The notes beneath the pieces were generated by a model that did not search any database, was not told where the DNA came from, and was given only the letters and a program-made list of their open reading frames with translations. DNA of 58,469 nt, counting the filler, from Bigelowiella natans CCMP2755 (lineage: Eukaryota > Protista > Cercozoa), in assembly GCA_000320545.1 (NCBI GenBank). It is 5 parts of 5 records of this genome, joined end to end, with 100 filler letters (N's around TTAATTAATTAA, not from the genome) between each part and the next. Parts side by side here need not be neighbours in the genome. Positions count along the whole stretch, not along the records: positions 41,888 to 58,469 come from ADNK01003568.1; 4 more parts are not named here. One strand, 5' to 3'. Made by a program: the position numbers and the translations under genes. Of this stretch, positions 41,888 through 58,469 are shown piece after piece (positions within the stretch are counted from its first letter, which is position 1; the number at the start of each line of letters is the position of its first letter).

Positions 41888-41935
<48 letters not shown>

Positions 41936-41949
41936 CCACTTCTACTCTT

Positions 41950-42619
41950 CTTATGCGACTATTACAACTACAACTACTGTTGCTGCTTCTACTTGTATCA
42001 GCACTCTCGAAGCGATAGTACTGGTCCTCGTCGAGCTTAAAGCCTGATGCAGTGAGGACTTGCTCACCCCCACTTATAGGTTCCACGTAATTCTGCATGG
42101 AGTTAGGAGAGGGAGAGACGGAAGGAATTAAATGTGCGGTTAAGAGAGGGAGAGAGCGAAGCTTTGATTCTGAGCTACTGGAAAATGGAGAGGGAGGAGG
42201 TGAACGTTCCAGTATTTTCACCACTCCCTTGCTTTCCCTCTTTCGAGATAAATCGTACAACACTACTACTAATAATAATCATAATAATCACAATAATAGT
42301 AATAATAACACTGATAGTACTACCACGAATATTGACTTTCTTGAGTCGATTTTTCTGAAACTCCCCATCTACACGATTTTGTGTGTTAAATAATGAGCAG
42401 ACCGCACTCAGTCAGGATGAAGCTCAAGGAGCAAGAAGAGGTTGCAGCATCATGCCGAAAACGTACCTTGGGGTGGTCCACGATGTTGGAAAATATCGTT
42501 CGAATAAGGGTGAAGTAGTTGAGGACTGTCCTGGGCTGTTTGACAAGTTGATCCGATAACACGATCCCAGTGAGAAGAGCGCGGATCTCATTTTCCGTTT
42601 TGTTCTTGCTCTCCGCCAT
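41950..42619 (-). CDS. PUB-domain protein (p97/Cdc48 adaptor-like), N-terminal exons, truncated at gap
   Basis: MAESKNK...LIRTIFSNIVDHPK|MGSFRKIDSRKSIFV|NYVEPISGGEQVLTASGF matches the PUB consensus NI..HP...YR.I.....F...V....GG..L...GF. Confidence 0.75.
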
Positions 42620-43130
42620 TGCTACACGCCTAATTTTCCGCCTGCCTGCGTCATGGAAAAAATATTTAGGGTCCGTCAGGCTACAGCACACATGTTTGCG
42701 CGTGCGTGCGTGTGTGAGGTCAACGTAAGGTAGAAATCGCATTTATCTATTCCGTATCTGCTGCTGCTTTCTCCACGTGCAAAAGGGTGCCTCGAATGAA
42801 CACCCCCACTGTCTCTTCCTACGTCCACTCCCTTGTACACAAAAAATTCCTCCCACCTTGCCCTATTCTCAACGCAGTCCGGCGCTCAAGATTAAAAGGG
42901 ATGGCCCACAATGTGTGAGAAATGAGGGAGGGGAGAGAAGTTTGCCTTCCGTGTTCAAGTGATATTTCCAGCTGCGACAACGAAATAAGCATGTCGCATG
43001 TGGGAATGACGTGATTAGGCAAGTTTCCTTGCTTGTGCATGCGATCTTTTCCACGACGACAACGATCTGTGGATGTCGTAGGGACAGTTGTCATTGACCC
43101 CCTTTCAACTGAAGTTGGCAAATATCAGGC

Positions 43131-44115
43131 ACTAAAGACAATGAAACTAGGAACGGAGGAGTGGCTAGAATGCCATTCTTGATTCCTCATGGTTTCACTA
43201 GTTAGACCTCACTGAAGTTAGTTCGAGGCACTGCATTTCGCACACTGCAAATGTCTTGTCACATTTTGGAAATGTAGTTCATCATCATTGTTCATTGTTC
43301 ATTGTTCAACTGTCAATGGGAGTCCTCGTTGTTTTCAGCTCGAGGCACTGCGTTTCGCACTTTGCAAAGTGTCATGTCATGCAACACTTTGGAAATTTGG
43401 TCGATCAGTGAATTTCTTTTTTTCTTTCAATGGAAACACTTCTTTGTTTCTTTTCAACTTTTTTTCTTTCCCTCACGTGCAGGGAGGACGTGCACGGACG
43501 AGTCAGCGTGTCCCATGACACGACTTGATTCGTGCCTGGACCACAGCCAGAGGCGTGCAGCCACGTGCATGACGATCTGGCACGGTCTGACACTGCCTTG
43601 GAAAAAAAAAAAGCTGCTGGTGCGGCGCTGGCTAGCTAGCTAGCTTGTTCCAGTCTGGCAGTGTTGAGCATGCTGCATGCGTGCTCCAAGCCAGCAAGTG
43701 AAGTTCGTGGTCGCCGCACACACGTGTGCACAGTGCCCTGCTAGCCTGACACGCTTGTGAATTTCACTTGGGCGCAAGTAGCCGGGCTTCTGAGACAGAG
43801 GTGTGCGACGAAGGTTCTGCGTTTCGCAAAAAAACCATTTGATCGATCGCCTGCAGTCGATTGTGTTCAGGTGCACAAAAAAACACGTTCTGCACCCAGG
43901 CCTAATTTGCGCGATCGGTTGGCGTGTTTGCACACCACACCGCCATTGTGGTGGTTGCCACGATTTTTCCATTGTTGCACACACATCACACACCACAGAT
44001 GCTTGTAGTGCGATGCACCCATGCCATCGTCTCGTTTTTCCATTGCCATTGACGCGCGCTTTAGCGTGGCGAACAATGGAACGCAGCCATGACAGTGCGT
44101 AGCGCCGCACTGTTT
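43131..44115. pseudogene. TpA-depleted hypermutated block 2 with fossil ORF and 55-bp imperfect direct repeat
   Basis: By eye, 16 TpA in about 985 nt, all CTAN or NTAG, with CpG abundant. Repeat copies at about 43223-43273 and 43340-43396. Minus-strand frame PIAQIRPGCRTCFFVHLNTIDCRRSIKWFF. Confidence 0.7.
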
Positions 44116-44470
44116 GCATATCCGTGCGATGATGAATGTGTGTGCTGCTAGGCTAGCAGGAGCTAGAGCGAGTGGGATTTTCATGATGCTTTTTGCATCA
44201 AAGGCTCAGGTCGTCAAGTTGCTTACCAACTAGCCCAGCTCTGACAATCATTTGCAACTACACTTATATTTCAGTGTCCCTATTCTCGCATGACCATTTA
44301 ATAGACAGACGAGTCACTTTGTTTCCAATGAAGCAAGATCGAAAGGGTAGTGACATCGACATCTAATACGCACGAGTCAATCTTTATTAGATAAAGTATA
44401 AAGCCAGAAACAATGTTCTTGGTGAATCGTGGAATTACACTGTCATCCTATTTTTCTAACTGTCGCCAGA

Positions 44471-46345
44471 CTATTCGCCAATAATGTATGATATGCCCTG
44501 TTCGAAGACTGCAGCACCCCGGTGGAGGACGGAAGCGCGCCATTTGTCACAATCGGGGTAGAAAGCTCTCAGCAGCACCTGTTTGACTGGTTCCTTTGGC
44601 TTCGTGGACCGGTTCGCGTGCCACCACGCACCCTCATTGATCATTGCCCTGAGGACCGAAATTCCATTCAATGTCCCAAATTCCTGGCACAGACTCAGCA
44701 CTGTTGGCGAGGAGGGAGCGTTGGCAAGCAGCTGCTTCGCGAGAGTATCGCAACTCCCTGCAGTTTCATAGAGAGTCCCGATGGCTGTGTCGCTCGCGTT
44801 CGGATCGGCGACATATTTCGAGCCGAAAATTGCGCGCAATGGTTCTAACAGCCCCGAGTCGTCGAATAGCAAGAGGTCCTGGCCGAACGCCCCCAATCCC
44901 GTATGAACGTCAACGTGTAGCACACGAAAGAGCTCTCTGATGATTTTTTTGGGGGGGAGGGGGGGGGTGGAGATAGCGGAGAGAAAGAAAGAGAGAGAAG
45001 ATAAGATTTCGAATGAAACATTTCAATATTTCCCCCTACGATTCTGGAAACATCAGCGAGAGTTTCATCCAGCTGGTATCTTCGATATACTTGCGAAAGC
45101 GGAGACACATATAACATAGAAAATGACATCATAGCAAAGCTGATGTTTCTCATACCAGTCGGGGGGAGATTGGATGTTATAGAGGGGGCAATAATATTAG
45201 CAGTAGCATCACTAATACTTGTTTGTGCAGCTTAATCCCATGGTTGCAAGCTCTTCAACGAGCATTTGAGGGCCAGGCTCGAGGCGTAACCCTCCGTAGA
45301 ATAAGCCGTTTTTGAACTCATATTGACCGCTCGCAAGGCCCTGTTTCGCCCTTCCGTACCCGTATCGGCAAACATTGTATCCTAGAGTGATGAGACGAGT
45401 ACGTAAGTGCAAGACCAATTTTGATGTCTTTCTCGGACTGATCACGTGGAACATGGGCATGTGAGTAGGCCATATCGACCTAGAAAGCAGTAGAAGCAGT
45501 CGCAGCATGCGTTCTTTGCTGGTACTAGTCCTCCATGCAGCGTCGGGTATATCTCTAGGGGTGCCAAAGAGCGTTCAGAATGCATTGTTCGTTAGTCCGA
45601 TGCTCGTACACAATGTAGCATTGTGAAGAGCTCCTCCTAAACGCGGCTAGTTGTTTGTGTGATAAATCTTACTGTTTCTCTTCCCTGGAGCTAGCATATC
45701 TTCGTGGCGATTTGACCCAAGATGGAAGTTGCGATTCAAATCCACATTGTTCTCGTTGAATTTGCGCAGCCAGGCCATTCCATAAGGGTTTACTGCGTAT
45801 GATTATTCTTATTAGTATTCTCACAATTATTACTATAAATACTATTCTAATTATTATCACATAGCAAAGTGATATTCAACAACTTTGTGCCATCAATGAA
45901 GGGTAAGATGAAATACCTGCATGAACCATGATGATCCTCACACCCTTAGCATTTTCGAGTCGCTTTCTAGCCTTCGCGTTCTCCTTAAGTCGCCTTAAAT
46001 AGTCTATCTGCACCGCTGGGCAAGACATTTTTCCAACATATTAATTAAACTTTCACACACAGCATATGGCAGAAACTCTATAGAATCACCTGAGCCCGCG
46101 AATCCCTCCACTCCATGCACCCCGCTAGTATGAATGAAAATGTGCCTTGGGTTTTCGGATTTGTCTCCAAGCACTGCAATATCTATGGAGAGCACCTCCC
46201 CGCTGGGCCCCCTCTCACCTTTCAAATCCAAGGATCTGGGATGATACGCTTTAATTGCCTTCGCCGCTTCCACGAACTTGCTCCGAGCCTCTGCGTAAGT
46301 ACTAGAAAAAGAACCGAGCCGGGATGGGCAGGCCTTGGATTCCAT
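44471..46345 (-). CDS. DUF2817 / M14-like zinc carboxypeptidase (spliced; start could lie up to about 46540)
   Basis: FSSTYAEARSKF, SGVHGVEGFAGS|AVQ, HA|VNPYGMAWLRKFNENNVDLNRNF, GQYEFKNGLFYGG, HVDVHTGLG, QEFGT and AFYPD. Confidence 0.88.
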
Positions 46346-46631
46346 TTCGCTGTCGTAACCAGTATTGAAACAAGGTGCAGTCTTATGGAACAACCCAACC
46401 CAAGCCGATATGTGGGGAAGAGGAGAGGGTAGGGGGGTGGGGCCCCGTCTTCCGAAATGCTCGGAAGATGACGGGAGTCTTCGACTAGCCCTGCCGGGCA
46501 AAAAATATCAGATGTCGTTGGGTCCATAATCCATGCCATTTTCTCGTACTTTTTGATGTCGCGCACTAGGAAATGGCCGGTCGTGCTGCTGCCCAAAAGG
46601 CCAGTGGCGTCATCTGAGAGAAGCGGCGAGC

Positions 46632-47309
46632 ATGGCACGCTCCTTACTGTCGCTGCGGTCGTACCTCAGAGCTGTGATGGTCGCAGCGACCATCGCGTTA
46701 GTCATGTGCGGCGGTGAGGAAGGTGGGGAGGTGAAGCAGTACATCGAAAACGGAGAGCTTGTCACTGCAGGGAGCGCGGTAGGCAAGCAGTTTTACATTA
46801 GCTATCTCCTTCGTTCCTGATATCTTTCCTCTCTCTGCCTCCCTCCCTCTCACATCCCTTGCCCGGCTTCTCTCCCTCTCCCCCTCCCTCTCCCTCTCCC
46901 CCTCCTCTTCCCCTGCCTCTCTCTCTCTCGCTCTCTCTCTCTCTCTTTCTCTCTCTCTCCCCCTCCCTCCCTCCCTCCTCCTAGGACTCGGAGCGATCAG
47001 AGGCATTCATGAAAAAACGTATCGAGAAGATGCAAGAGCACATGGAGGCTCAAGACAAGTCAGTAAGATTACCCGTAGGGACCTACCCTATTATACCTGT
47101 CGAGGGAGGAGGAGGAGGAGAAGGAGGAGGGAGGAGGAGGAGGAAGGAGGATGCTTGTAGCTTGTCATTCTCTGATCTGTGGTTCGTTTCGAGTTCAAAT
47201 CTTTGGATGCTTTTATTAGGGAAGAGGGTATTCGATTTAAGAGTCCTATTGCTGAAGTTGATCGAGAAGTTGTCGAGGGAAAACTAGGGGTGCTCCTTGT
47301 TTAAAAAAA

Positions 47310-47354
<45 letters not shown>

Positions 47355-47983: not shown

Positions 47984-48037
<54 letters not shown>

Positions 48038-48284
48038 CACCTATCAGGGAGGGATATATGCTTACTGCCGGTCACCAATGGCAAAGTATCTAACCGCTAA
48101 GAAGAAAGTCTCCAAAAAACCTGACGCTAAGCGGCCAAAAGGGAAGACGAATAAACGCGCTGAGAACTTACCTGCAGTGGCAAAGGCACCGGCACGGAAA
48201 TCAGCAAATCAGAAAACATCCTCAGCTACGGAAGCGCATATGGTGGAAATTGACCTTCCAACCATCCCGACAGGGGTAGCATAG
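46632..48284 (+). CDS. Hypothetical type-I membrane protein with Lys-rich cytosolic tail (about 7 exons)
   Basis: Signal MARSLLSLRSYLRAVMVAATIALVMCG; phase-consistent exons ...AGSA|DSERSEAF...|...VVQKDR|GDIHTTYVLEIL...WWSIAKYWVFNIVLV|GGIYAYC (TM), then AKKKVSKKPDAKRPKG...*. Confidence 0.65.
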
Positions 48285-48303: not shown

Positions 48304-48355
<52 letters not shown>

Positions 48356-48599: not shown

Positions 48600-50026
48600 T
48601 TAGCATGCCTATCTTGAAGTTGCGCATGACGAGCTAAGGTGCCTCAATGTGAGATTGTACGTTTTTCAGTTCTACTTGCTAGATTGTAGCTTTGTTCACA
48701 TTGCCACTCAGCATTGCCATTCGCATGCCATGCACGTCCAATCTAGCAATGCGACACAGCGTGTCATGAATTAGACATTCTAGCGTTGTCAGCAGCCATG
48801 TCGCATGCATCTGTTGCACAGCCAACAGAAACCTGTAACAATGGCCTCCTGAGCATGATGCGCGGGTCAGGCCTCGGTTGAAACCCCCAGAAATACTGGA
48901 AAATCGTCACAAATGATCAAAACGCACTTCACACAATTTTTGTGAGCTTTTGCGGCTAGTTGGTGCGCTGAAACACCTCTGAACGCTCCAAAATGAGCTC
49001 AGATTCACACTCCATCGCATTTGCCAACACATGTGGACATTCCACATGAACAACACTTGTGATTTGCGCCCGCATTTGGTTGAAACTAGGAAAGTGCAGA
49101 ATGACAAATTTTGAAACAAAAAGTTCAACTGAAAAATTGCTCTGTTCCAGTGTTGTGCTCGAATTTTGAGATGCATGCTCCAGTGCTTGTGACATTGGTG
49201 TGGAAAAAGTGTGTGCGACACTCACATGTGTCTTTGCTCGCGAAAACTCAAATTGAGACAAGTCATCGTCTGCAAAAAATGGTGAGGTTTTTTGAAACTT
49301 GAGGCCTCCAAAAAACTTGAAAAGGGGTCGAATGCTGGCATGCTGGCATGGTGTGACTTCTGGACTTTCGCGTGCGTCAGTCTAGCAGTGCGTGTGCGGC
49401 CTGAAAGTTGGTCAGGCATTTTTTCCAAGTGCATTCATGATTTTTGAATCGCCGCTGCGCGTTGCACTGCGCTGGCTAGCTGGGGTTGGCCAAACCATGA
49501 GTGTTGCATTGGCACGGCTAGACGGTTTCTTGACTGCTGGTTGAGTGCCACCACACATGCACGCTGCACGCGTGTTGTTGCTTCTTTGCTGTTCCGCAGC
49601 ACGCTCTGCGGTTCCACACTCATCCACAAGGGGAGTTCACTCGCCAGGATTTCGTTGGTCCTTGTCATGCTCGGGGTGTCGTCAGCTAGTCAGCTGCGAA
49701 AAAAGTTCGATCATTTCGCCCAGAAACTGCATTTTTTCAACAGATTTCACAACGTTTTCCTCAGCTAGCGCTGGCTGGACAGATCTTGAACTTGGAAGTT
49801 TGATCAAGTTTCCACAGGTTCGGAGTCGAAATGGATCGAGTGCAGAGCAAGGATCTGCGAGGTGGTGGTGAACTTGGAGGGACCACAACAACAATGAAGG
49901 GGAGACGCAATTCGAGAGGCCATCTTCATCCCTTTGCTCTGAGTCAAAAAAAAGGCGAAATTCGATGTTCCAACACCGAAGAAAAGAAAATTGTCCAAAC
50001 TGCGTTGTTTGCACATCTAGATCTAG
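48600..50026. pseudogene. TpA-depleted hypermutated block 3 (longest)
   Basis: In 48901-50026 there are only 9 TpA by eye, every one in CTAG; CpG is frequent. Confidence 0.75.
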
Positions 50027-50461
50027 TACAGCTTGTAGTATTACGCACATTTTTCTCCCGATTGATTTCTGGCAATGCGACAACAATGTTTCCTTGTCGT
50101 AGGCCATAGGAAACAGAATCACCGCCTTGCGGCGAACACATGGGGGGGTACCCCATGTCTCGCTTTTCTGAGAGTTTGTGCTTTTCACCGAAGATTGTAT
50201 GTCGTTGAAACGGTCAACGTTACTCTTGTCGGTAACTAGAAGGAGCTCCTCTTTTCTAAGTAGATTCACCTGAAAACGACGAAGACATGTCATTGCTGCC
50301 TCCCCGACACGCGGTTCCATTCCATTTTCACTCAAATTTCTTGAGAAGAAATGCTTCCCGCCGTGTAGCAAAATTTTCACAAATAAGAGGCCCTGGTTGA
50401 AAAAATAATAATGGAGCGGGGCAGCCATCCGGCAGAGCATCAACCTTCGATCTCCGGTCAT
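49682..50461 (-). CDS. 259-aa ORF whose 3' half lies inside the hypermutated block (possible partly mutated gene)
   Basis: Open frame. The 5' part contains Tyr (HYYFF, MAYD); the last ~115 aa contain no Tyr but have Cys/His in aromatic-like positions. Confidence 0.45.
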   Translation of the reverse strand: MTGDRRLMLCRMAAPLHYYFFNQGLLFVKILLHGGKHFFSRNLSENGMEPRVGEAAMTCLRRFQVNLLRKEELLLVTDKSNVDRFNDIQSSVKSTNSQKSETWGTPPCVRRKAVILFPMAYDKETLLSHCQKSIGRKMCVILQAVLDLDVQTTQFGQFSFLRCWNIEFRLFFDSEQRDEDGLSNCVSPSLLLWSLQVHHHLADPCSALDPFRLRTCGNLIKLPSSRSVQPALAEENVVKSVEKMQFLGEMIELFSQLTS

Positions 50462-51595
50462 ATACGCATCCCGAACCTAATTATCTCCCAATCAGAAGAG
50501 TATGACACCTCCGCTAGTTTCTACGCAAAAGCTTTCAGACCCATAAATAACAGCCCAAGGAGCAAACCAAATCTTGGTGGAGTCTGCGCACTTGGATTTC
50601 AGGAGTCTTCTTCTCTAGAGAAGGCGAACTGGGCTTGGGAAAAAAGACAAAAGAAAAGAGAATTGAAGCGGGGAAAATCCTCACCTGGTGCGCGCTTTTC
50701 ATTCGCTAATAAGACAGGAACAACGAAAACCATAAACAGTGTGGAAGAAAAGACGCAGAGTTCAAACGATGAACAAACAAGCAAGATTATGCCACAAAAG
50801 CGAAATTCTACGAAGCCCTTTTCGCCGGATATGTTCCTGAAATTTCATAATGAGAAAAACAACTTAAATGTTACGGAAAATGCGAATCCGTTTTGTGAGT
50901 CGTTGAATTCTTCTTTTGATCATTTCGAAGATTCATCCAGTTCATTTAGTCGTAGCACTGGGAGTTGCTACAGCGCTCGTAGTGGCTGCTCAACGCCTTG
51001 CGCGACATCGTCCACAAGACAACAGTCGACTGGATCTAGAGCTTCTCTCGAGCGCAAAGGTGGGCTTTCAGATAAAGCCAAGTATTGCATTCTGTTAATT
51101 TTAAGGGTAGAGTCGGATGATACAGTGCTTCAGAAAAACCCGCTATCCGGGAAGGAAATCTCACGGATATTGAATAGCGTGTTCCTTCTTCCCGAACCCA
51201 AGAAAGATAGGGTCAGAAGCTATATTAAGAGTCGGAACATTCCTGCGTCCAGAAGCCATCGAGATTCTATAGGTAGAGCAGCATGAATGTCATAGTAGAG
51301 ATGTTGGCTGAGAGAAATATTAGTCTTTCTCTGCCTCGTGTCTAATTTTATTTTCTTTGTTCTAGGACGAAACGAGTACTACAAAGACAAAAAGAAAATT
51401 GAGATAATCCAAGAGAGAATCATGCACTCAATGGAATCACTCGAAAACAAGGTTAGGATGTGGCTAAACGAGAGCTTCTTGGCATCCTCCGGCAAGACAT
51501 CTGCTACCAACTGGAAGAATTATTGGAAAAATCTGATCAGCTGCACGATAAAGCAAAAGAAACATTTTGCTGCCGTGGCACAATTTCTTGAATGA
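50411..51595 (+). CDS. Hypothetical Ser-rich protein with C-terminal helical (HTH-like) and coiled segment, 3 exons
   Basis: 291-aa ORF with donor ATA G|gtagag splicing in frame to RNEYYKDKKKIEIIQERIMHSMESLENK|, then a probable LLGILRQDICYQLEELLEK exon. Confidence 0.55.
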
Positions 51596-52440
51596 GAGGA
51601 ACAAAATTATGCATTGTAAATTAATTTTTACGTGCATGCCTAGAGAAAAATGATTCTTGTATACATCAGCAAATAGAGCGATTTCGAAACAGTTCATGGA
51701 GCTAGTCGTCCAAAAAGTGAAGTACGGGCAAATACTTGCGTAGGTTGCTCTGATTACTAATCTGGCCAATTTCCTCACTGTCAAGCGGTACCTTGTCTTC
51801 TCAGATGGATAATATAAGTATCAAATTATACACTCATGCATGCCCTTGAAGGTTGTTGATAATATATGAAGGGTCTTATAATCACACTAGTACGTGCCAT
51901 GTCGCATGTACGGAAATAGCGCACATTCTGGCCCAATAAGGAGTCCCACAATCTTCTTCTTTGTTGACAATATAGCAACCTTTTCATGTTGCAGATTTGC
52001 ATAGCGTGCATCGTATAGTAGTCTACGCATAGTACTGTGCTACGCTGGCTATGCGTTCACAACGTACTTATGAAATTATACTTATAGCAGTGCAAAGCAC
52101 GCAAATTAAACGTAATCCAACGACGATGCGAAATAATCCTGGGGGAAACCCCTTCGACCAAATCATACATTAAAATTCTGCTCATCTGTAGCAGCGTACT
52201 ACACGTGCAATGCGATGCGCTACATAGCGTGCATGGCAAAGACTTAGCATGAGCAAGAAATTAAGCATGTATCATTAGCATAGCTTGTGGTCGGTCATGA
52301 CCACCAAGCGCGTGCTTGCATTAGGCAGCATGCTAGGCATGTAGTTTTGTTCTAGTTTAGTTTTGATGGCAGCATGTTGGATGCATGCGTTTGCATGTGC
52401 AATGCATGCATGCTTGCGCATTTGCCTTGGGCAGTGCGAC

Positions 52441-53040
52441 AGGCTTTCTAAGTCATGTTGTGCACATTAGGTGCCATGCATGTGTTTAGCATTTGTCATG
52501 GTTTCTTTTGTGCTCAAGTTTGTGGGCACATGTGGGCCTGATTGTGTAGGTGCGCGTTGGCATGCAAAGGTGTGCGTGTTGCATGCGTGGCATGGGGGTT
52601 TCTACATGATGTCACATGGGTTCAGACAGCTTGTCAGTGTGATGTTGCATGTCAGCATCATGCAGGTGATGGTCACATTCTTCTAGCATGGCTTGATGGT
52701 GAAGCGCATGGATGGGGGGGCAGCATTGGGAAGTGATGCAGCCACCCAATTCATGTGCATGTGTGGGGACAAAATGAGTTAGTAAGTTTTGGCATTTTGG
52801 CCCCGCTTGGGCCATTGCGACATGGAAGGTGTTGTGTTGCAAAAGGGAACTTTTGCAGCACAAGTTGGCGAAATGATGTTGGGGAAAAATGTTGCCTTTT
52901 CAATCTGAAAATAGCGTGATGTGATGTGTTTGACTAAGCTATTTGCAGCAAAGTGAAACGCGCGCGCAAAAGTTAAAAGACCCGCGTGCGAGCGGTGATG
53001 TCCTCTTGGGAGCTTGTTTCTGTCAGCATGCATGCTCAAG
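52441..53040. pseudogene. TpA-depleted hypermutated block 4 with fossil ORF
   Basis: 12 TpA in 600 nt, 10 of them CTAN/NTAG. Minus frame ...QAMLEECDHHLHDADMQHHTDKLSEPM is His/Cys-rich. Confidence 0.7.
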
Positions 53041-54050: not shown

Positions 54051-54087
<37 letters not shown>

Positions 54088-54414
54088 ATGTGTGTGTGTG
54101 CGTGTATGTGCGCATGTGTGGTTTTTAGCATTCTATTAATACGTATATCGCCACATATGTACATCTGAATTTTACCATAGAAAAGTGTCCATAATGTAGA
54201 CATACACGCACACAATTTCCAATGCCACTAGCCTATATCTACATACCAAGAGTTCATGGTGCTCGTGGAGGAGCTTCTCGGTGACCTTGTATCTCTGGGC
54301 TTCATACGCACGCTACATTTAGCAGCAGCAGCAGCAGCAATAGCAACAAGAGCAGTAGCAGCGGAAGAAGATTTTAGCACTCATCAAATCGCATTGTATC
54401 CGCCCACGCACACA

Positions 54415-54464
<50 letters not shown>

Positions 54465-55257
54465 GAGACAGAGAGAGAGAGAGAGGGGGGGGGGGGGGGA
54501 GAGAGTGAGAGGCCAATTCTATTCTATCTACGCTCTTCATTGTGAAACACCTGCTCCATCTGGTTTTCCCCGTCTTTGTCGATCTCGGTCTGAAATTGCT
54601 TGCTCAGATCCTCCACCTGAATAAGGAAGGAAAGGGGAGAAGCGTTACTCCTACAGCGAGTACACAGATTGCCTCGATGACAAAAGACGTTCGCATCTTC
54701 TTCTAGAAGAAGGTATCCGACAAAAAACACAGATGATTCTTAGCGCGAACTATAGCATATAATTCAAAATTGCCGCCCTAAAGATAAGTTCAAGATGGGG
54801 AGTCCCGCGGAGAATTCAGGCCGTATTGGAAAATTCGGTCTGCTATTTCCGCTTCGATGATTTTGTCGCGCAAAATCTGTCGGTGTTCTCATTGTAAATA
54901 TGTCTTAAGTTTGCGTAATCTCCTGTTACTGTGTTTTTTTTTAATTAAGATTGTTATGGACTCGGACTCTACTTTCTTCTTGCATTCCTGAGAAACTTTG
55001 ACGTATGCATTGCCTCTCTCATCTGAGACCTGCACGTGACATTGCAATAATGCTCAATGTAATCATCATTCGCCACAAAAAACAAATTTTCACAGAACGA
55101 TCATCATTCGAGGGGAATGGTCTCATTTGGAAGAGCGACAAGGGCAGTAACGAGTGACATTTGACAGCTCAAGATAGCAGATGATATCCAAATGTAACTA
55201 CCTTTTCTTTATCGGTCTCGAGCTGTTTTGTCTGGGCTTGCATTTGCTCTACTCTGT

Positions 55258-55324
<67 letters not shown>

Positions 55325-56170
55325 GAGTGGGGAGGGGGGGAAGGGAGGGTAGAGGGACAAAATGAAAAAGGACAAGGTGGCAAAAGGAGCGGACGGGTTC
55401 AAAGGTAAGGGGGGGGAGATGCATCCGTTGAGAACATATAGAGAAAATATGCTACTGCGCTCCTTACGAGGGATCTATTCTGTTCCTCATATCTTTGAAA
55501 AGCTGCCCGATTGTTCTCTGATCGCGTCTGCTAGCATCCTCTCGGAGCTGAAGAAGAGTTGCAAGGAAGGGTTGAGAAAAAGCAGTATTTTGAGAAATCG
55601 AAAGCACAGCCGCAGTGCAAAAGCAACGAATGCTGCTCACATGTATAGTCGCAACCCTCTAAACAAACCGAATGAGACTGTTAGATATGTCTCCATTCTT
55701 CTATCCATTTGGACATCGTCATGACTTCGGTTCATCGCTTGCATTGATTTTTTAATTTTCATCGAATAGTACCACGGTCAAAGCGTATTTGAGGTTGTCC
55801 GACTCCTCCCCCGACCACTTACCGTTCTGCACGCGCTGCATTTCGTCACGGAACTCGCTAATCTGTTTCAAAGCAGCCACACGGTGTGAAGTGAACATTC
55901 CACCACTACCGCTACACCAGTAGATTATTAGGCTTTAGCACACTTACACTCGCGCAGCAGTCGAAGATACCCAGATGTTGCGATTTGTCAGCCATTCCCC
56001 TACCATCCGCTGACGTGTAGACTACAAGTATCGTAGCTATGGCCGTTACCACAAGCCAGATTCGCCTGAATGTGTTTCGAAGATTGTAAGGCACTTCAAC
56101 GGTTAGCGGGTCAGGGGGGTACCTGAGGGTAGGGGGGGAGTTCCGTCGTACCGACGACGCCAACATCGTG
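53861..56170 (-). CDS. Hypothetical coiled-coil protein with possible TM helix (exon chain only partly resolved; may be two genes)
   Basis: Exons ISEFRDEMQRVQN, LREDASRRDQRTIGQLFKDMRNRIDP|SVEQMQAQTKQLETDKEK|, VEDLSKQFQTEID and AQRYKVTEKLLHEHHELL|SEKEKLRDELRKLREASFS*; upstream FRRIWLVVTAIATILVVYT. Confidence 0.45.
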
Positions 56171-56636: not shown

Positions 56637-58363
56637 ATCCGTGGCGGAGTGGGAGAGGGTTGGGCCGCCGCTCCTCCAAGATGCCGACACTATGCTTGCG
56701 GCCGTCGAGAGTATCTTTGAGGACGCTCTAGGTGGGGAGATATCATCCACCACCTCCACGCAACAGAATCTTCCTATTACGACGCCAACTTTACGATCTC
56801 TCGCACTCGCACATTCGCACAAACAAACAACCAAACAACACAAATACGCACACACATGATGTGCGCGCACCACCCTTGTACTCGCAGAAAGCGGGGACGA
56901 ATCGAACCTAAAGCGTCTTTTACGCATTGTGGCGACGAATGCAAGGTATGGAGACGATGTTGCATGATTTCTCCCTCCCCCTTACATAGACAAGGTGACG
57001 GAGCGGATGGCAGCTTGTACACAACATGCACACAGAAATATTGTTTAAGCTATCTACTAAATAATAAATACAATAAGTAGATATTCATATCCATAATGCC
57101 TTCTCTTCCCAACTGACTACGCAGCCCGCACCCTCTATTAACGGAGAAGTGCGTACAGCTAATGATGTGCATGGAGGACAAGAAGGACCTCATTCATCTC
57201 CTCCCGCAGCTATGTGGCGATTCTGTGCCCGAGGTACTGAATAGTAGCAACGTTGAGAGATGAGTCCTCATTACCAAAATATCATCCAAAAGCCATCATG
57301 CTCCAGCATTTTCCTGCTGATTGATGTACGCTTCCGCGCAGTTTTCTCTGCTTTCAATTTCGTTCCCCGGCGGTAGGTATCGCTCGTTGTTACGGCCTTC
57401 AAGGACATCTTGGAGGAGTCATCGGAGTACCTGGTGCGTAGTCCCCAAGCACGACGAGAGAGAATGTGAATTGATAATGACCGCGAACACGACGATGCTC
57501 TATGCATGCCCTGCGATCGGCCGCAGCGACTATGTGTCGGACGGAACGAAGAGTCGTCGTCGTTGTTTTTTTAGTTTTTAAGTATTAGCAGTAGCAGTAG
57601 CGTCAGAATTGCATGATTTGCGGCGGGGGCTACACCAGAGAGTAGCTTGTCGTGTATCCTTTCACAATTGGTGCTGCAATATCCACAGCGTCAGGGAAGT
57701 ATCATCAGCTATAACATAGGGGAAAAGAAGACAACCCCTGTTTCTGCATCGTTGAGAGCTTCTCGCTCATCACGCGTATTTGTCGTCTCTTCACATCGTC
57801 ATCGTAGTCAACTGGCTGTTGTAGGTGCCAATCCTAGGTGCTCTGAGCGACCTCGACTTGCCCCCGGAGCTCAGCGACGAGATCTTTGAACTCACGAGGA
57901 AATCCCTCAGGGTGGGTGGGGGGGGGAGAAGGAGAGGAAGGGAGAGAAGGGACGGGGGGGGGGGGGCGGAAGAGGAGTGGGTATGTACTGGTGATGCTGG
58001 TTATATTTTGAGAGAGATGTAGGCTGGTGATGTGCAGATTATGTATCTGTATCTTTCTCACCGCCTCTTTCGCTTGACTCTCCCTCACCATACCTTGAAT
58101 ACTCCATGGTAGGTGGTAAATGAGGGCGATTACCCCTCCGTTGCACGCACGCTACTAGTCATTCTTGATAAAGGCGCGTCGTTCAGTCTGGAAGCGCTGG
58201 AGGCCATTAACGACATTCGAAGGTAGTGATTGATGATGAATCCAATTTCTCGGAGAAATTTGCTCCAAGACTACCCTCAAGAGCATATATCATCTGTGCT
58301 TTCTTTCGTCATTGGATTGCTTCCCGCCGTATTTTTGAACGCGTGGTTGGTATTGACGTTCAT

Positions 58364-58396
<33 letters not shown>

Positions 58397-58469
58397 CACG
58401 CACACACACGCACACACACACACAGGCACTCGACGACGATTAGCCCGCACACGATGTCTCTGATGCTGC
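56637..58469 (+). CDS. FANCD2: Fanconi anemia group D2 protein, N-terminal solenoid exons (both ends incomplete)
   Basis: LTEKCVQLM...KDLIHLLPQLCGDS|VSLVVTAFKDILEESSEYL|VPILGALSDLDL...|VVNEGDYPSVARTLL...EAINDIR|...LNAW parallels the recalled human LTTKIMQLI...HDIITSLPEILGDS...LTVPILDVLSSL...EDLPVIIKFIL...EVISELR...SEAW. Confidence 0.8.

What the first reader, a model, noticed from the sequence alone, without database searches (positions are those of the whole stretch)
48901..50026. Candidate undescribed genome-defence mutator: TpA erased except in CTAG, CpG retained ('reverse-RIP' A-to-G hypermutation)
Seen: in about 1125 nt I count only 9 TpA, all in CTAG, whereas roughly 70-80 would be expected from the A/T content. 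CpG stays common and TpG/CpA words (catg, tgca, gcac, acat) are in excess. Flanking genes have normal TpA. Established: 5mC deamination depletes CpG and fungal RIP creates TpA from CpA; neither fits. Inference: a process converts TpA to TpG/CpA (A-to-G on either strand) in the palindromic context D-T-A-H and spares CTA/TAG. This could be a DNA adenine deaminase or a modified-adenine mutator aimed at foreign or repeated DNA. TadA-derived DNA adenine editors are known to favour TA context, so such chemistry is feasible.
Basis: partly seen in the sequence, partly recalled or inferred. Interest (0 to 1): 0.85.

Follow-up and report, generated by a model that had tools for sequence, protein, structure and literature searches.

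The report
TpA-erased tract from alga's hypermutator
A 1.1-kb stretch between two genes of the marine alga Bigelowiella natans has lost every TA step except those inside CTAG. This is the end product of a TA-to-TG/CA DNA hypermutation that a 2026 preprint measured directly in this species, and the CTAG exemption is a new clue to how the unknown enzyme reads DNA.

Summary
Window 48895-50026 (1132 nt) holds 9 TpA, all within CTAG. About 78 are expected from composition and about 60 non-CTAG TpA from the flanking DNA (P about 1e-26). CpG is normal, and TpG and CpA are each 1.5-fold over. TA+TG+CA is conserved (0.197 against 0.192), so TA was converted to TG/CA. A second saturated tract lies at 43276-43778.

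The DNA is Bigelowiella natans nuclear genome. A 2026 bioRxiv preprint (10.64898/2026.01.13.699255) reports, from mutation-accumulation lines, a roughly 1000-fold hypermutation of A>G/T>C strictly at TpA in integrated viral DNA. It also reports genome-wide TpA-poor, CpA+TpG-rich windows.

The preprint does not mention the CTAG exemption. Survival here is graded: DTAH is lost first, CTAH/DTAG more slowly, CTAG not at all. In the preprint's own mutation table, an A followed by G accounts for 23 of 235 events against about 25% expected. This points to a D-T-A-H target. It does not fit ADAR (which favours UAG) or the ADAT2 precedent (GAA).

The tract itself is intergenic. It has no detectable viral, transposon or repeat signature, so why it was targeted is unknown.

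The parts
48895..50026 (.). Saturated hypermutated tract 1 (the finding). There is no TpA outside 9 CTAG sites. RhoTA is 0.12, Rho(TG+CA) 1.51 and CpG o/e 0.80.
48638..48894 (.). Left shoulder of tract 1, partly depleted. The surviving TpA are mostly CTAG or half-sites (3 CTAG, 3 CTAH/DTAG, 2 DTAH).
43276..43778 (.). Saturated tract 2, 503 nt. Its only TpA are 4 CTAG, three of them in GGCTAGCTAGCTAGC. RhoTA is 0.13 and Rho(TG+CA) 1.59. It lies downstream of the DUF2817 gene.
42888..43275 (.). Left shoulder of tract 2, partly depleted. It contains copy A of a local ~85-nt duplication. Its two TpA correspond to CA and TG in copy B, which lies inside the core.
   Evidence: (family D5).
50305..51884 (+). 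Expressed orphan gene next to tract 1. Its exons are 50305-51273 and 51363-51884, and the product is 363 aa (P0154). TpA is normal, and the 5' end of the assembled transcript lies 279 nt from the tract edge.
44360..46389 (-). Host DUF2817 gene with six mapped exons. It identified the organism and serves as a control for normal TpA (introns have RhoTA 0.90).
52340..52900. Third TA-poor zone, not a pure case. It is GCATG-rich, with TG 0.159 against CA 0.096, CpG fraction 0.020 (o/e 0.39 in window 52388-52887) and TA+TG+CA 0.275. Another process or a motif-rich sequence is superimposed.

Best explanation
The tract is B. natans nuclear intergenic DNA in which the species' locus-targeted TpA hypermutation has run to completion. 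On both strands, the A of 5'-TpA-3' was changed to G, so TA became TG or, read from the other strand, CA. This continued until no substrate was left.

The mutator reads a four-base window. A C two bases 5' of the A, or a G immediately 3' of it, slows the reaction several-fold. When both are present, which for both strands is true only in the palindrome CTAG, the site is effectively immune. CTAG is therefore the only TpA left.

What is shown:
- The composition and the mass balance.
- The graded survival of TpA contexts.
- The species identity.
- From the preprint, the de novo TpA-specific A>G/T>C hypermutation in this species.

What is inferred:
- That this tract was hit by the same process.
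- That CTAG immunity is an intrinsic substrate preference of the mutator.
- That the chemistry is adenine deamination in DNA (A to inosine, read as G).
- That the target was chosen because it is, or was, a silent relic of foreign or mobile DNA.
For: Species: the DUF2817 exon is 99% identical to a cluster that holds B. natans protein Bigna1 92009. Three JGI-held transcript contigs (one product carries an MMETSP name) map at 99.7-100% identity.

The process is known in this species. On scaffold 10, 210 of 211 mutations are A>G/T>C, as are 20 of 20 on scaffold 146. They are essentially all at TpA, at a rate of about 1e-7 to 1e-6 per site per generation.

Conversion rather than avoidance: TA+TG+CA is 0.197 in tract 1 and 0.207 in tract 2, against 0.192 in the background. 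TG and CA rise about equally (115 against 98, p = 0.27), as in the mutation-accumulation lines (91 A>G against 115 T>C at TpA). CpG is unchanged.

Context rule, density relative to background:
- DTAH: 0 in the cores, 0.16 in the shoulders.
- CTAH/DTAG: 0 in the cores, 0.64 in the shoulders.
- CTAG: 2.85 in the cores, 2.16 in the shoulders.
All 13 core survivors are CTAG (Fisher p = 1e-16). The three-class chi-square for the shoulders gives p = 2e-7.

Independent support comes from my hand count of the preprint's Table S2. An A followed by G (rows TAG plus CTA) accounts for 23 of 235 TpA events (9.8%), against 24.7% of TpA sites in ordinary DNA of this piece (p = 9e-9).

Polarity: in a local duplication, both TpA of the copy outside the core are CA or TG in the copy inside it.
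Against: - No reads, polymorphism data or paralogues are available for this tract, so the A>G direction at this locus is inferred, not observed.
- The tract shows no viral, transposon or repeat signature. There are no Pfam hits. IMG/VR gave no relatives. The protein search gave no homologues. The tracts are not similar to each other.
- At 1.1 kb it falls below the preprint's cluster definition of at least three consecutive 1-kb windows.
- CTAG is enriched 2-3-fold, not merely retained (13 against 4.6 expected, p = 9e-4; 11 if the CTAGCTAGCTAG run is collapsed, p = 0.007). Pure sparing does not predict this.
- The background for the +1 G test comes from this piece, not from the viral scaffolds.
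- In Table S2 the two orientations differ (TAG 3 against CTA 17, p = 0.003), and this is unexplained.
- Shoulders and cores were delimited after looking at the data.
Confidence: 0.8

Rival explanations
1. The hypermutation process is the same, but CTAG survives because it is protected, not because the mutator dislikes it. Protection could come from site-specific methylation of CTAG, from a protein bound to CTAG, or from dedicated repair of the I:T or G:T intermediate in that context. In the protein-binding version, the bound protein may be the one that targets the mutator to the locus.
For: CTAG is enriched 2-3-fold in cores and shoulders rather than only retained. 10 of 13 core CTAG sites carry a G before or a C after the tetramer. 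A model with only a +1 G penalty of about 0.3-0.4, as estimated from Table S2, predicts under 45% CTAG survival once DTAH is exhausted. That is far below what is seen.
Against: Half-sites (CTAH/DTAG) decay at an intermediate rate. De novo events are already 2.5-fold poor in +1 G. Additive per-strand context effects explain both observations without any extra factor. No methyltransferase or CTAG-binding protein is known or seen here. The enrichment rests on 13 sites, three of them in one short repeat.
Confidence: 0.12
2. The signature is the same, but the primary lesion is on thymine rather than adenine. For example, a TET/JBP-type dioxygenase could oxidise T in TpA to 5-hydroxymethyl- or 5-formyl-uracil, which mispairs with G or is misrepaired, giving T>C. 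In that reading the disfavoured context is a C immediately 5' of the target T.
For: TpA is its own complement, so A>G and T>C cannot be told apart from sequence. The counts are symmetric. From my own knowledge, not tested here: dinoflagellate DNA carries 5-hydroxymethyluracil preferentially at TpA and TpC, and 5-formyluracil promotes A:T to G:C transitions. The context preferences reported for adenine deaminases do not match well. The amphioxus ADAT2 paper reports GAA for that enzyme on DNA and describes broad adenine context for ABEs, and ADAR favours UAG (PMC2532740).
Against: There is no evidence of thymine modification in chlorarachniophytes in the papers I searched. Deamination of A to inosine gives exactly A>G with no transversions, which matches the 230 of 231 transitions. 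The preprint's authors identify an ADAT2-like protein with the DNA-permissive Asn.
Confidence: 0.12
3. The tract is not mutated in place. It would be either a piece of DNA that arrived with this composition, or a regulatory region kept TA-free by selection, for example to avoid TA-targeting transposons or nucleases.
For: The tract sits just upstream of an expressed gene. No ancestral copy is available to prove conversion.
Against: The conserved TA+TG+CA sum and the equal TG and CA gains fit conversion. The shoulders grade by context exactly as a kinetic process would. A mutational process with this signature has been measured in this species. I know of no genome with TpA confined to CTAG. Selection would have to remove all 15 other NTAN words on both strands over 1.1 kb of non-coding DNA.
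Confidence: 0.04
4. It is a sequencing or assembly artefact, for example systematic base-calling errors at a modified motif.
For: None specific. Modified bases can bias some platforms.
Against: Independent transcript assemblies agree with the flanking window sequence at 99.7-100%. The preprint mapped Illumina reads of 16 samples to the same reference, with 90% of it callable and low SNP density outside the viral regions. The pattern has kinetic shoulders and recurs in tract 2.
Confidence: 0.01

Closest known systems
TpA-targeted hypermutation of integrated NCLDV and virophage DNA in Bigelowiella natans (Mettrop et al., bioRxiv 10.64898/2026.01.13.699255, 2026)
   Same: The organism is the same. 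The signature is the same: TpA to TpG/CpA on both strands, TpA depletion with CpA+TpG enrichment, and CpG untouched. The tract meets that paper's RhoTA cut-off (0.12 against <=0.43) and sits at its Rho(CA+TG) cut-off (1.51 against >=1.52).
   Different: This tract is short (1.1 kb, against 25-186 kb regions and clusters of at least 3 kb). It is saturated: RhoTA is 0.12 here and 0.45 in the NCLDV insert. It has no viral or transposon genes and lies between expressed host genes. It also exposes a tetranucleotide rule (CTAG immune, half-sites slowed). The paper does not mention that rule: 'CTAG', 'context' and 'tetranucleotide' have no occurrences in the text or in the held supplements.
[quoted passage not shown]
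   Same: It is a genome-defence-type, locally confined, dinucleotide-specific transition hypermutation that ruins a stretch of DNA and leaves a compositional scar.
   Different: RIP changes C to T, mainly at CpA. It creates TpA and lowers GC, needs duplicated sequence, and acts before meiosis. Here TpA is destroyed, GC rises, and no duplication is evident.
ADAR hyper-editing of double-stranded RNA
   Same: It is an A-to-G (inosine) change with a preference for U/T 5' of the edited A, occurs in clusters, and is used against viral and repeat sequences.
   Different: ADAR acts on RNA, so it leaves no genomic scar. The UAG triplet is edited more often (PMC2532740). Here TAG is the least mutated triplet (23 of 235) and CTAG is immune.
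ADAT2/ADAT3 and TadA tRNA adenosine deaminases, and TadA-derived adenine base editors
   Same: Their natural target, A34, follows the universal U33, which is a U-A step (my own knowledge). ADAT2 of amphioxus and evolved TadA can deaminate DNA. The preprint proposes the ADAT2-like protein Bn78255 as the mutator.
   Different: Amphioxus ADAT2 prefers GAA for adenine in DNA, and ABEs are described as having broad adenine context compatibility (PMC10354150). From my own knowledge, not tested here: natural ADAT substrates such as tRNA-Thr(AGU) and tRNA-Ser(AGA) carry C32-U33-A34-G35, which is exactly the CTAG context that is immune here. No enzyme is encoded in this window.
AID/APOBEC cytosine deaminases
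   Same: They perform host-directed deaminase hypermutation of foreign DNA with a short sequence context.
   Different: They change C to U on single-stranded DNA, giving C>T/G>A, in TC, CC or WRC contexts. Here CpG and the C-containing dinucleotides show no loss.
CTAG avoidance in bacteria linked to very-short-patch repair
   Same: The same tetranucleotide, CTAG, behaves as an outlier among TA-containing words because of a context-specific mutation or repair process.
   Different: The direction is opposite. In enterobacteria CTAG is the rarest tetramer, whereas here it is the only TA word that persists and it is enriched 2-3-fold.

Membership tests
B. natans TpA hypermutation footprint (Mettrop et al. 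2026) | Located in the B. natans nuclear genome | tested here: met
   The exon at 44471-44923(-) is 99% identical to a cluster that holds jgi Bigna1 92009. The next relative is Lotharella oceanica at 52%. JGI-held transcript contigs map with introns at 99.7-100%.
B. natans TpA hypermutation footprint (Mettrop et al. 2026) | TpA depletion (RhoTA <= 0.43) coupled with CpA+TpG enrichment (Rho >= 1.52) | tested here: met
   Tract 1 has RhoTA 0.12 and Rho(TG+CA) 1.51, which is at the cut-off. Tract 2 has 0.13 and 1.59. TA+TG+CA is conserved.
B. natans TpA hypermutation footprint (Mettrop et al. 2026) | Changes at the locus are A>G/T>C at TpA (de novo or polymorphic) | tested here: inconclusive
   The only evidence is a local 85-nt duplication, in which 2 of 2 TpA in the outside copy align with CA or TG in the inside copy. 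No reads, strains or paralogues were available. Two degenerate probes found nothing in the JGI collection.
B. natans TpA hypermutation footprint (Mettrop et al. 2026) | The target is of foreign (viral, transposon) origin | tested here: inconclusive
   No Pfam domain was found in any ORF of the tract. IMG/VR gave no relatives, and the protein search gave no homologues. The terminal inverted repeat is weak (p about 0.03-0.06). Saturating mutation would erase such signals, so their absence is not informative.
B. natans TpA hypermutation footprint (Mettrop et al. 2026) | Cluster of at least three consecutive 1-kb windows | tested here: not met
   The saturated core is 1132 nt, or about 1.4 kb with its shoulder. 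The cluster table S10 is truncated in the held copy, and no scaffold-165 gene appears in the held lists.
Fungal RIP | C>T at CpA, creating excess TpA and depleting CpA/TpG in repeated DNA | tested here: not met
   TpA o/e is 0.12 and CpA and TpG are 1.5. No repeat partner is present in the piece.
5-methylcytosine deamination (CpG decay) | CpG depletion accompanying TpG/CpA excess | tested here: not met
   CpG o/e is 0.80, within the range of the flanks. The TG/CA gain equals the TA loss.
ADAR-type editing | Preference for G 3' of the edited A (UAG), with a double-stranded RNA substrate | tested here: not met
   TAG is the least-hit triplet in Table S2 (23 of 235 against 24.7% expected, p = 9e-9), and CTAG is immune here. 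The change is fixed in genomic DNA.
ADAT2/TadA-type deaminase as the agent | An HxE-PCxxC deaminase acting on these loci | not testable with these tools
   No such gene lies in the window. The candidate Bn78255 is named only in the preprint. Context data for ADAT2 on DNA (GAA) do not match T-A-H.

The most novel reading that the evidence does not exclude
CTAG is not only spared but accumulates 2-3-fold in the saturated tracts. That leaves open that CTAG palindromes take an active part in the system. They could be the footprint of a CTAG-binding or CTAG-modifying factor that marks DNA for the mutator, or shields the sites from it. This would be a restriction-modification-like logic in a eukaryotic nucleus.

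A linked possibility is that the mutator's reach extends well beyond viral inserts to many short intergenic patches next to active host genes. Three TA-poor zones lie in these 16.6 kb, two of them saturated.
Probability: 0.12. Interest if true: 0.85.

Novelty: new member of a known kind. Interest (0 to 1): 0.5.

Why it matters
The phenomenon is remarkable. It is a regulated, locus-specific, TpA-specific A:T-to-G:C DNA hypermutator in a eukaryote, which works in the reverse direction to fungal RIP. It was reported in 2026, so this tract is a further instance and not a discovery.

What this tract adds is a saturated end state that reads out the mutator's substrate window (D-T-A-H, with CTAG immune). 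Re-reading the published mutation table shows the same bias (+1 G under-hit 2.5-fold). That gives a concrete biochemical fingerprint for testing candidate enzymes. It already argues against an ADAR-like preference and does not fit the ADAT2 precedent.

It also suggests a sharper genome-wide detector: runs with no TpA outside CTAG, in place of 1-kb Rho windows. Such a detector would find short footprints like this one. These lie below the preprint's 3-kb cluster threshold, in ordinary intergenic DNA.

Tried and rejected
- A word-indexed protein search with the DUF2817 exon found nothing because of the length filter. The exhaustive search solved the species question.
- Rfam and tRNA scans of the piece gave no hits.
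- The bacterial promoter and terminator scan is uninformative for a eukaryote.
- Pfam on all ORFs of 60 aa or more in and around the tract gave nothing at E <= 1.
- Two tract ORFs found no relatives in IMG/VR.
- The 264-aa ORF that spans the right edge has no homologue, and not even a matching database entry for itself.
- Two degenerate probes (TG written as TR, CA as YA, to catch unmutated copies or transcripts) found no match in JGI metagenome and transcriptome contigs.
- blastn between the three TA-poor zones found only chance-level hits, so they are not copies of one repeat.
- Terminal inverted repeats at 48913-48940 and 49987-50016 score at p = 0.03-0.06, which is not convincing.
- I tried a product-side analysis (CTGH/DCAG against CCAH/DTGG) to decide whether the -2 C or the +1 G matters more. 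It was too noisy at this size.
- The B. natans gene model P0151 is not in the contig index, so no further genomic DNA of this species could be fetched to test the CTAG rule on independent tracts.
- The preprint's cluster table S10 is truncated in the held copy.
- CpG decay, RIP, an ADAR-type process, a sequencing artefact and selection against TA were all considered and rejected, for the reasons given under rivals and membership.
Full report
**1. The observation**

Window 48895-50026 (1132 nt) contains 9 TpA, and every one lies in CTAG. All 15 other NTAN words are absent. Mononucleotide shuffles give 78 +/- 6.6 TpA, with a minimum of 53. At the non-CTAG TpA density of the rest of the 16.6-kb piece, 59.6 are expected, so P(0) = 1.3e-26.

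CpG o/e is 0.80-0.81, similar to the flanks. TpG and CpA are each 1.5-fold over expectation.

Controls within the same piece show the effect is local:
- Introns of the neighbouring genes: RhoTA 0.90.
- Exons: RhoTA 0.67.
- Two other intergenic stretches: RhoTA 0.69 and 0.77.
- The 278 nt between the tract and the next gene's transcript: RhoTA 0.66.

The right edge is abrupt, at 50026/50027. The left edge grades over about 250 nt. A second saturated tract of 503 nt lies at 43276-43778 and keeps only 4 CTAG. A third TA-poor zone at 52340-52900 has a different make-up: it is GCATG-rich, TG greatly exceeds CA, and CpG is depleted. I do not count it as a clean case.

**2. What the DNA is**

The piece has microsatellites and spliced genes, so it is eukaryotic.

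- An exon of a DUF2817 gene is 99% identical to a protein cluster that contains Bigelowiella natans model Bigna1 92009. The next relative is Lotharella oceanica at 52%.
- Transcript contigs held by JGI map back with introns at 99.7-100% identity.
- The DUF2817 gene occupies 46389-44360 on the minus strand, with six mapped exons.
- An expressed orphan gene (363 aa, P0154) occupies 50305-51273 plus 51363-51884 on the plus strand. It has no Pfam domain and no homologue other than itself among 5.8 billion proteins.

The tract is therefore intergenic. It ends 279 nt upstream of the 5' end of that transcript. Tract 2 lies downstream of the DUF2817 gene.

**3. What is already known**

A bioRxiv preprint (10.64898/2026.01.13.699255, version of 14 April 2026) reports a mutation-accumulation experiment in B. 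natans.

- Of 302 nuclear single-nucleotide mutations, 231 fall in an integrated NCLDV (scaffold 10, 186 kb) and a virophage insert (scaffold 146, 25 kb).
- Those regions mutate at about 1e-7 to 1e-6 per site per generation, roughly 1000-fold above the rest of the genome.
- 230 of the 231 are A>G or T>C, essentially all at TpA.
- Only some lines show the activity.
- Genome-wide, the authors find 324 TpA-poor predicted CDS. [quoted passage not shown]
- They propose DNA adenine deamination and name an ADAT2-like protein as the candidate.

The process is real, but it is no longer undescribed.

**4. Does this tract carry that footprint?**

- RhoTA is 0.12 and Rho(TG+CA) is 1.51 for tract 1. The values are 0.13 and 1.59 for tract 2. 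These meet or touch the preprint's cut-offs.
- The fraction TA+TG+CA is conserved: 0.192 in the background, 0.197 in tract 1 and 0.207 in tract 2. Conversion of TA into TG/CA predicts this. Loss of TA to arbitrary sequence does not.
- TG and CA rose about equally (115 against 98, p = 0.27). Both strands were therefore hit, as in the mutation-accumulation lines (91 A>G against 115 T>C at TpA on scaffold 10, my count).
- A local ~85-nt duplication straddles the edge of tract 2. The two TpA in the copy outside the core align with CA and TG in the copy inside it. This is a small sample, but in the predicted direction.

**5. The new detail: CTAG**

The preprint never mentions CTAG, context beyond the dinucleotide, or tetranucleotides. 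This holds for the text and the held supplements. A literature search for CTAG together with 'TpA depletion' found nothing.

Here survival is graded by context. Densities relative to the background of the piece are:

| Context | Cores | Shoulders |
|---|---|---|
| DTAH | 0 | 0.16 |
| CTAH/DTAG (half-sites) | 0 | 0.64 |
| CTAG | 2.85 | 2.16 |

All 13 survivors in the two cores are CTAG (Fisher p = 1e-16). The three-class distribution in the shoulders differs from the background at p = 2e-7.

The preprint's Table S2 lists the trinucleotide around each new mutation. My hand count for scaffold 10 is:
- A>G: TAA 32, TAC 22, TAG 3, TAT 34.
- T>C: ATA 33, CTA 17, GTA 30, TTA 35.
- Non-TpA events: four T>C (ATG 3, ATT 1) and one C>T.

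Adding scaffold 146 and the nine scattered TpA events, the base 3' of the edited A (both strands folded together) is A 74, C 57, G 23, T 81. So +1 G accounts for 9.8% of events, against 24.7% of TpA sites in ordinary DNA of this piece (p = 9e-9). That baseline is borrowed from host DNA. The viral insert is already half-depleted and so should be enriched in protected contexts, which makes the test conservative.

A penalty for +1 G alone (about 0.3-0.4) cannot explain full CTAG survival once DTAH is exhausted, because it predicts survival below about 45%. A simple model does fit. In it, -2 C and +1 G each slow the reaction on their own strand, and their effects multiply. Rough values from these small counts are f_G about 0.35 and f_C about 0.13. 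Half-sites then decay at about a quarter of the DTAH rate, and CTAG at about 5%. These numbers are indicative only, because cores and shoulders were delimited after looking at the data.

**6. Mechanism**

Shown:
- A TpA-specific A:T>G:C hypermutator exists in this species (preprint).
- This tract has the exact compositional end state of that process.

Inferred:
- The tract was produced by that process.
- The target window is D-T-A-H.
- The chemistry is A-to-inosine deamination in DNA.

The context rule is useful for testing candidate enzymes.
- ADARs edit UAG triplets preferentially (PMC2532740). That is the opposite of what is seen here.
- Amphioxus ADAT2, the precedent cited for DNA editing, prefers GAA for adenine. 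The same paper describes ABEs as having broad adenine context compatibility (PMC10354150).
- From my own knowledge, natural ADAT substrates such as tRNA-Thr(AGU) and tRNA-Ser(AGA) present C32-U33-A34-G35, which is the immune context.

The ADAT2 candidate is therefore not supported by the context data, though it is not excluded either. Because TpA is palindromic, a thymine-directed route (oxidation to 5hmU/5fU followed by mispairing) gives the same signature and cannot be ruled out from sequence.

**7. Why this tract was targeted**

This is unknown.
- It is unique within the piece.
- It has no domain hits.
- It has no relatives in IMG/VR.
- It has no protein homologues.
- Two degenerate probes found no match in JGI transcript or metagenome contigs.
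- A terminal inverted repeat near both edges is only marginal (p = 0.03-0.06).

A relic of a mobile or viral fragment, degraded beyond recognition, is the default reading, but it is an assumption. Three TA-poor zones in 16.6 kb, all between genes, suggest that short footprints may be common. They would be missed by the preprint's rule of at least three windows.

**8. Unexplained**

- CTAG is enriched rather than just kept: 13 against 4.6 expected, p = 9e-4, or 11 with the CTAGCTAGCTAG run collapsed, p = 0.007. CTGG/CCAG is also about 3-fold over.
- Possible reasons are the ancestral sequence, slow accumulation of CTAG as a mutational sink (ordinary C>T at CCAG/CTGG with no way back out), or an active role of CTAG sites.
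- In Table S2 the two orientations of the same event class differ: TAG 3 against CTA 17, p = 0.003.

**9. Verdict**

The phenomenon is already published, so this is a new instance of a known kind. It carries one informative addition, CTAG immunity and a D-T-A-H window, which can be checked at once against existing data.

Noticed in passing
window 43276-43778 (shoulders 42888-43275 and 43779-44300): A second saturated TA-free tract of 503 nt. Its only TpA are 4 CTAG, three of them in GGCTAGCTAGCTAGC. It lies downstream of the DUF2817 gene and is not similar in sequence to tract 1.
   Followed up: yes
window 52340-52900: A TA-poor zone packed with GCATGC/TGCATG words. TG greatly exceeds CA (0.159 against 0.096). 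CpG fraction is 0.020 (o/e 0.39 in the 52388-52887 window), and TA+TG+CA is 0.275 against 0.19 elsewhere. This is not explained by TA-to-TG/CA conversion alone. CpG decay or a motif-rich element may be superimposed.
   Followed up: partly
window 50305-51884 (+), intron 51274-51362: An expressed orphan gene (363 aa, P0154, found in JGI-held transcript assemblies, with an MMETSP transcript name) with no Pfam domain. It has no homologue other than itself in the 5.8-billion-protein search. Its TpA content is normal, although it adjoins the hypermutated tract.
   Followed up: partly
preprint Table S2 (scaffold_10 rows), read: The two orientations of the same event class differ: A>G in TAG occurs 3 times and T>C in CTA 17 times (p = 0.003). 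Four T>C events are listed in ATG or ATT contexts, although the text says all events fall on TpA.
   Followed up: partly
window 48913-48940 and 49987-50016: An imperfect inverted repeat (about 28 nt, ATG..CAAA..AACGCA..CAATTTT) sits roughly 20 nt inside each edge of tract 1. This could be the remains of transposon termini, but it scores only p = 0.03-0.06 against shuffles and random window pairs.
   Followed up: yes
window 50364, 50705, 44906, 44577, 45540: The window and the JGI-held transcript contigs differ at five positions. All are C/T or G/A transitions, four of them at CpG/TpG sites, and none at TpA. Ordinary genic polymorphism therefore differs in kind from the tract signature.
   Followed up: no
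window 46828-46977, 47313-47351, 47988-48038, 48307-48352, 54052-54121 with 54400-54506, 55265-55360, 58351-58443: There are dense (CT)n, (GA)n and (CA)n microsatellites and long G runs in the intergenic DNA. They include a (TC)n(TG)n block at 54052-54121 that forms an inverted pair with a (CA)n(GA)n block at 54400-54469, 278 nt away.
   Followed up: no
window 41889-42278 (-): A weak PUB-domain match (E = 3e-4, below Pfam's cut-off) in an ORF cut by the edge of the piece. It is probably an exon of a further host gene flanking tract 2.
   Followed up: no
cores 43276-43778 and 48895-50026: CTGG/CCAG is about 3-fold over the background expectation (21 against 7.1), alongside the CTAG enrichment. 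GCGCTGGCTAGCT occurs in both tracts (49461 and 43625).
   Followed up: partly
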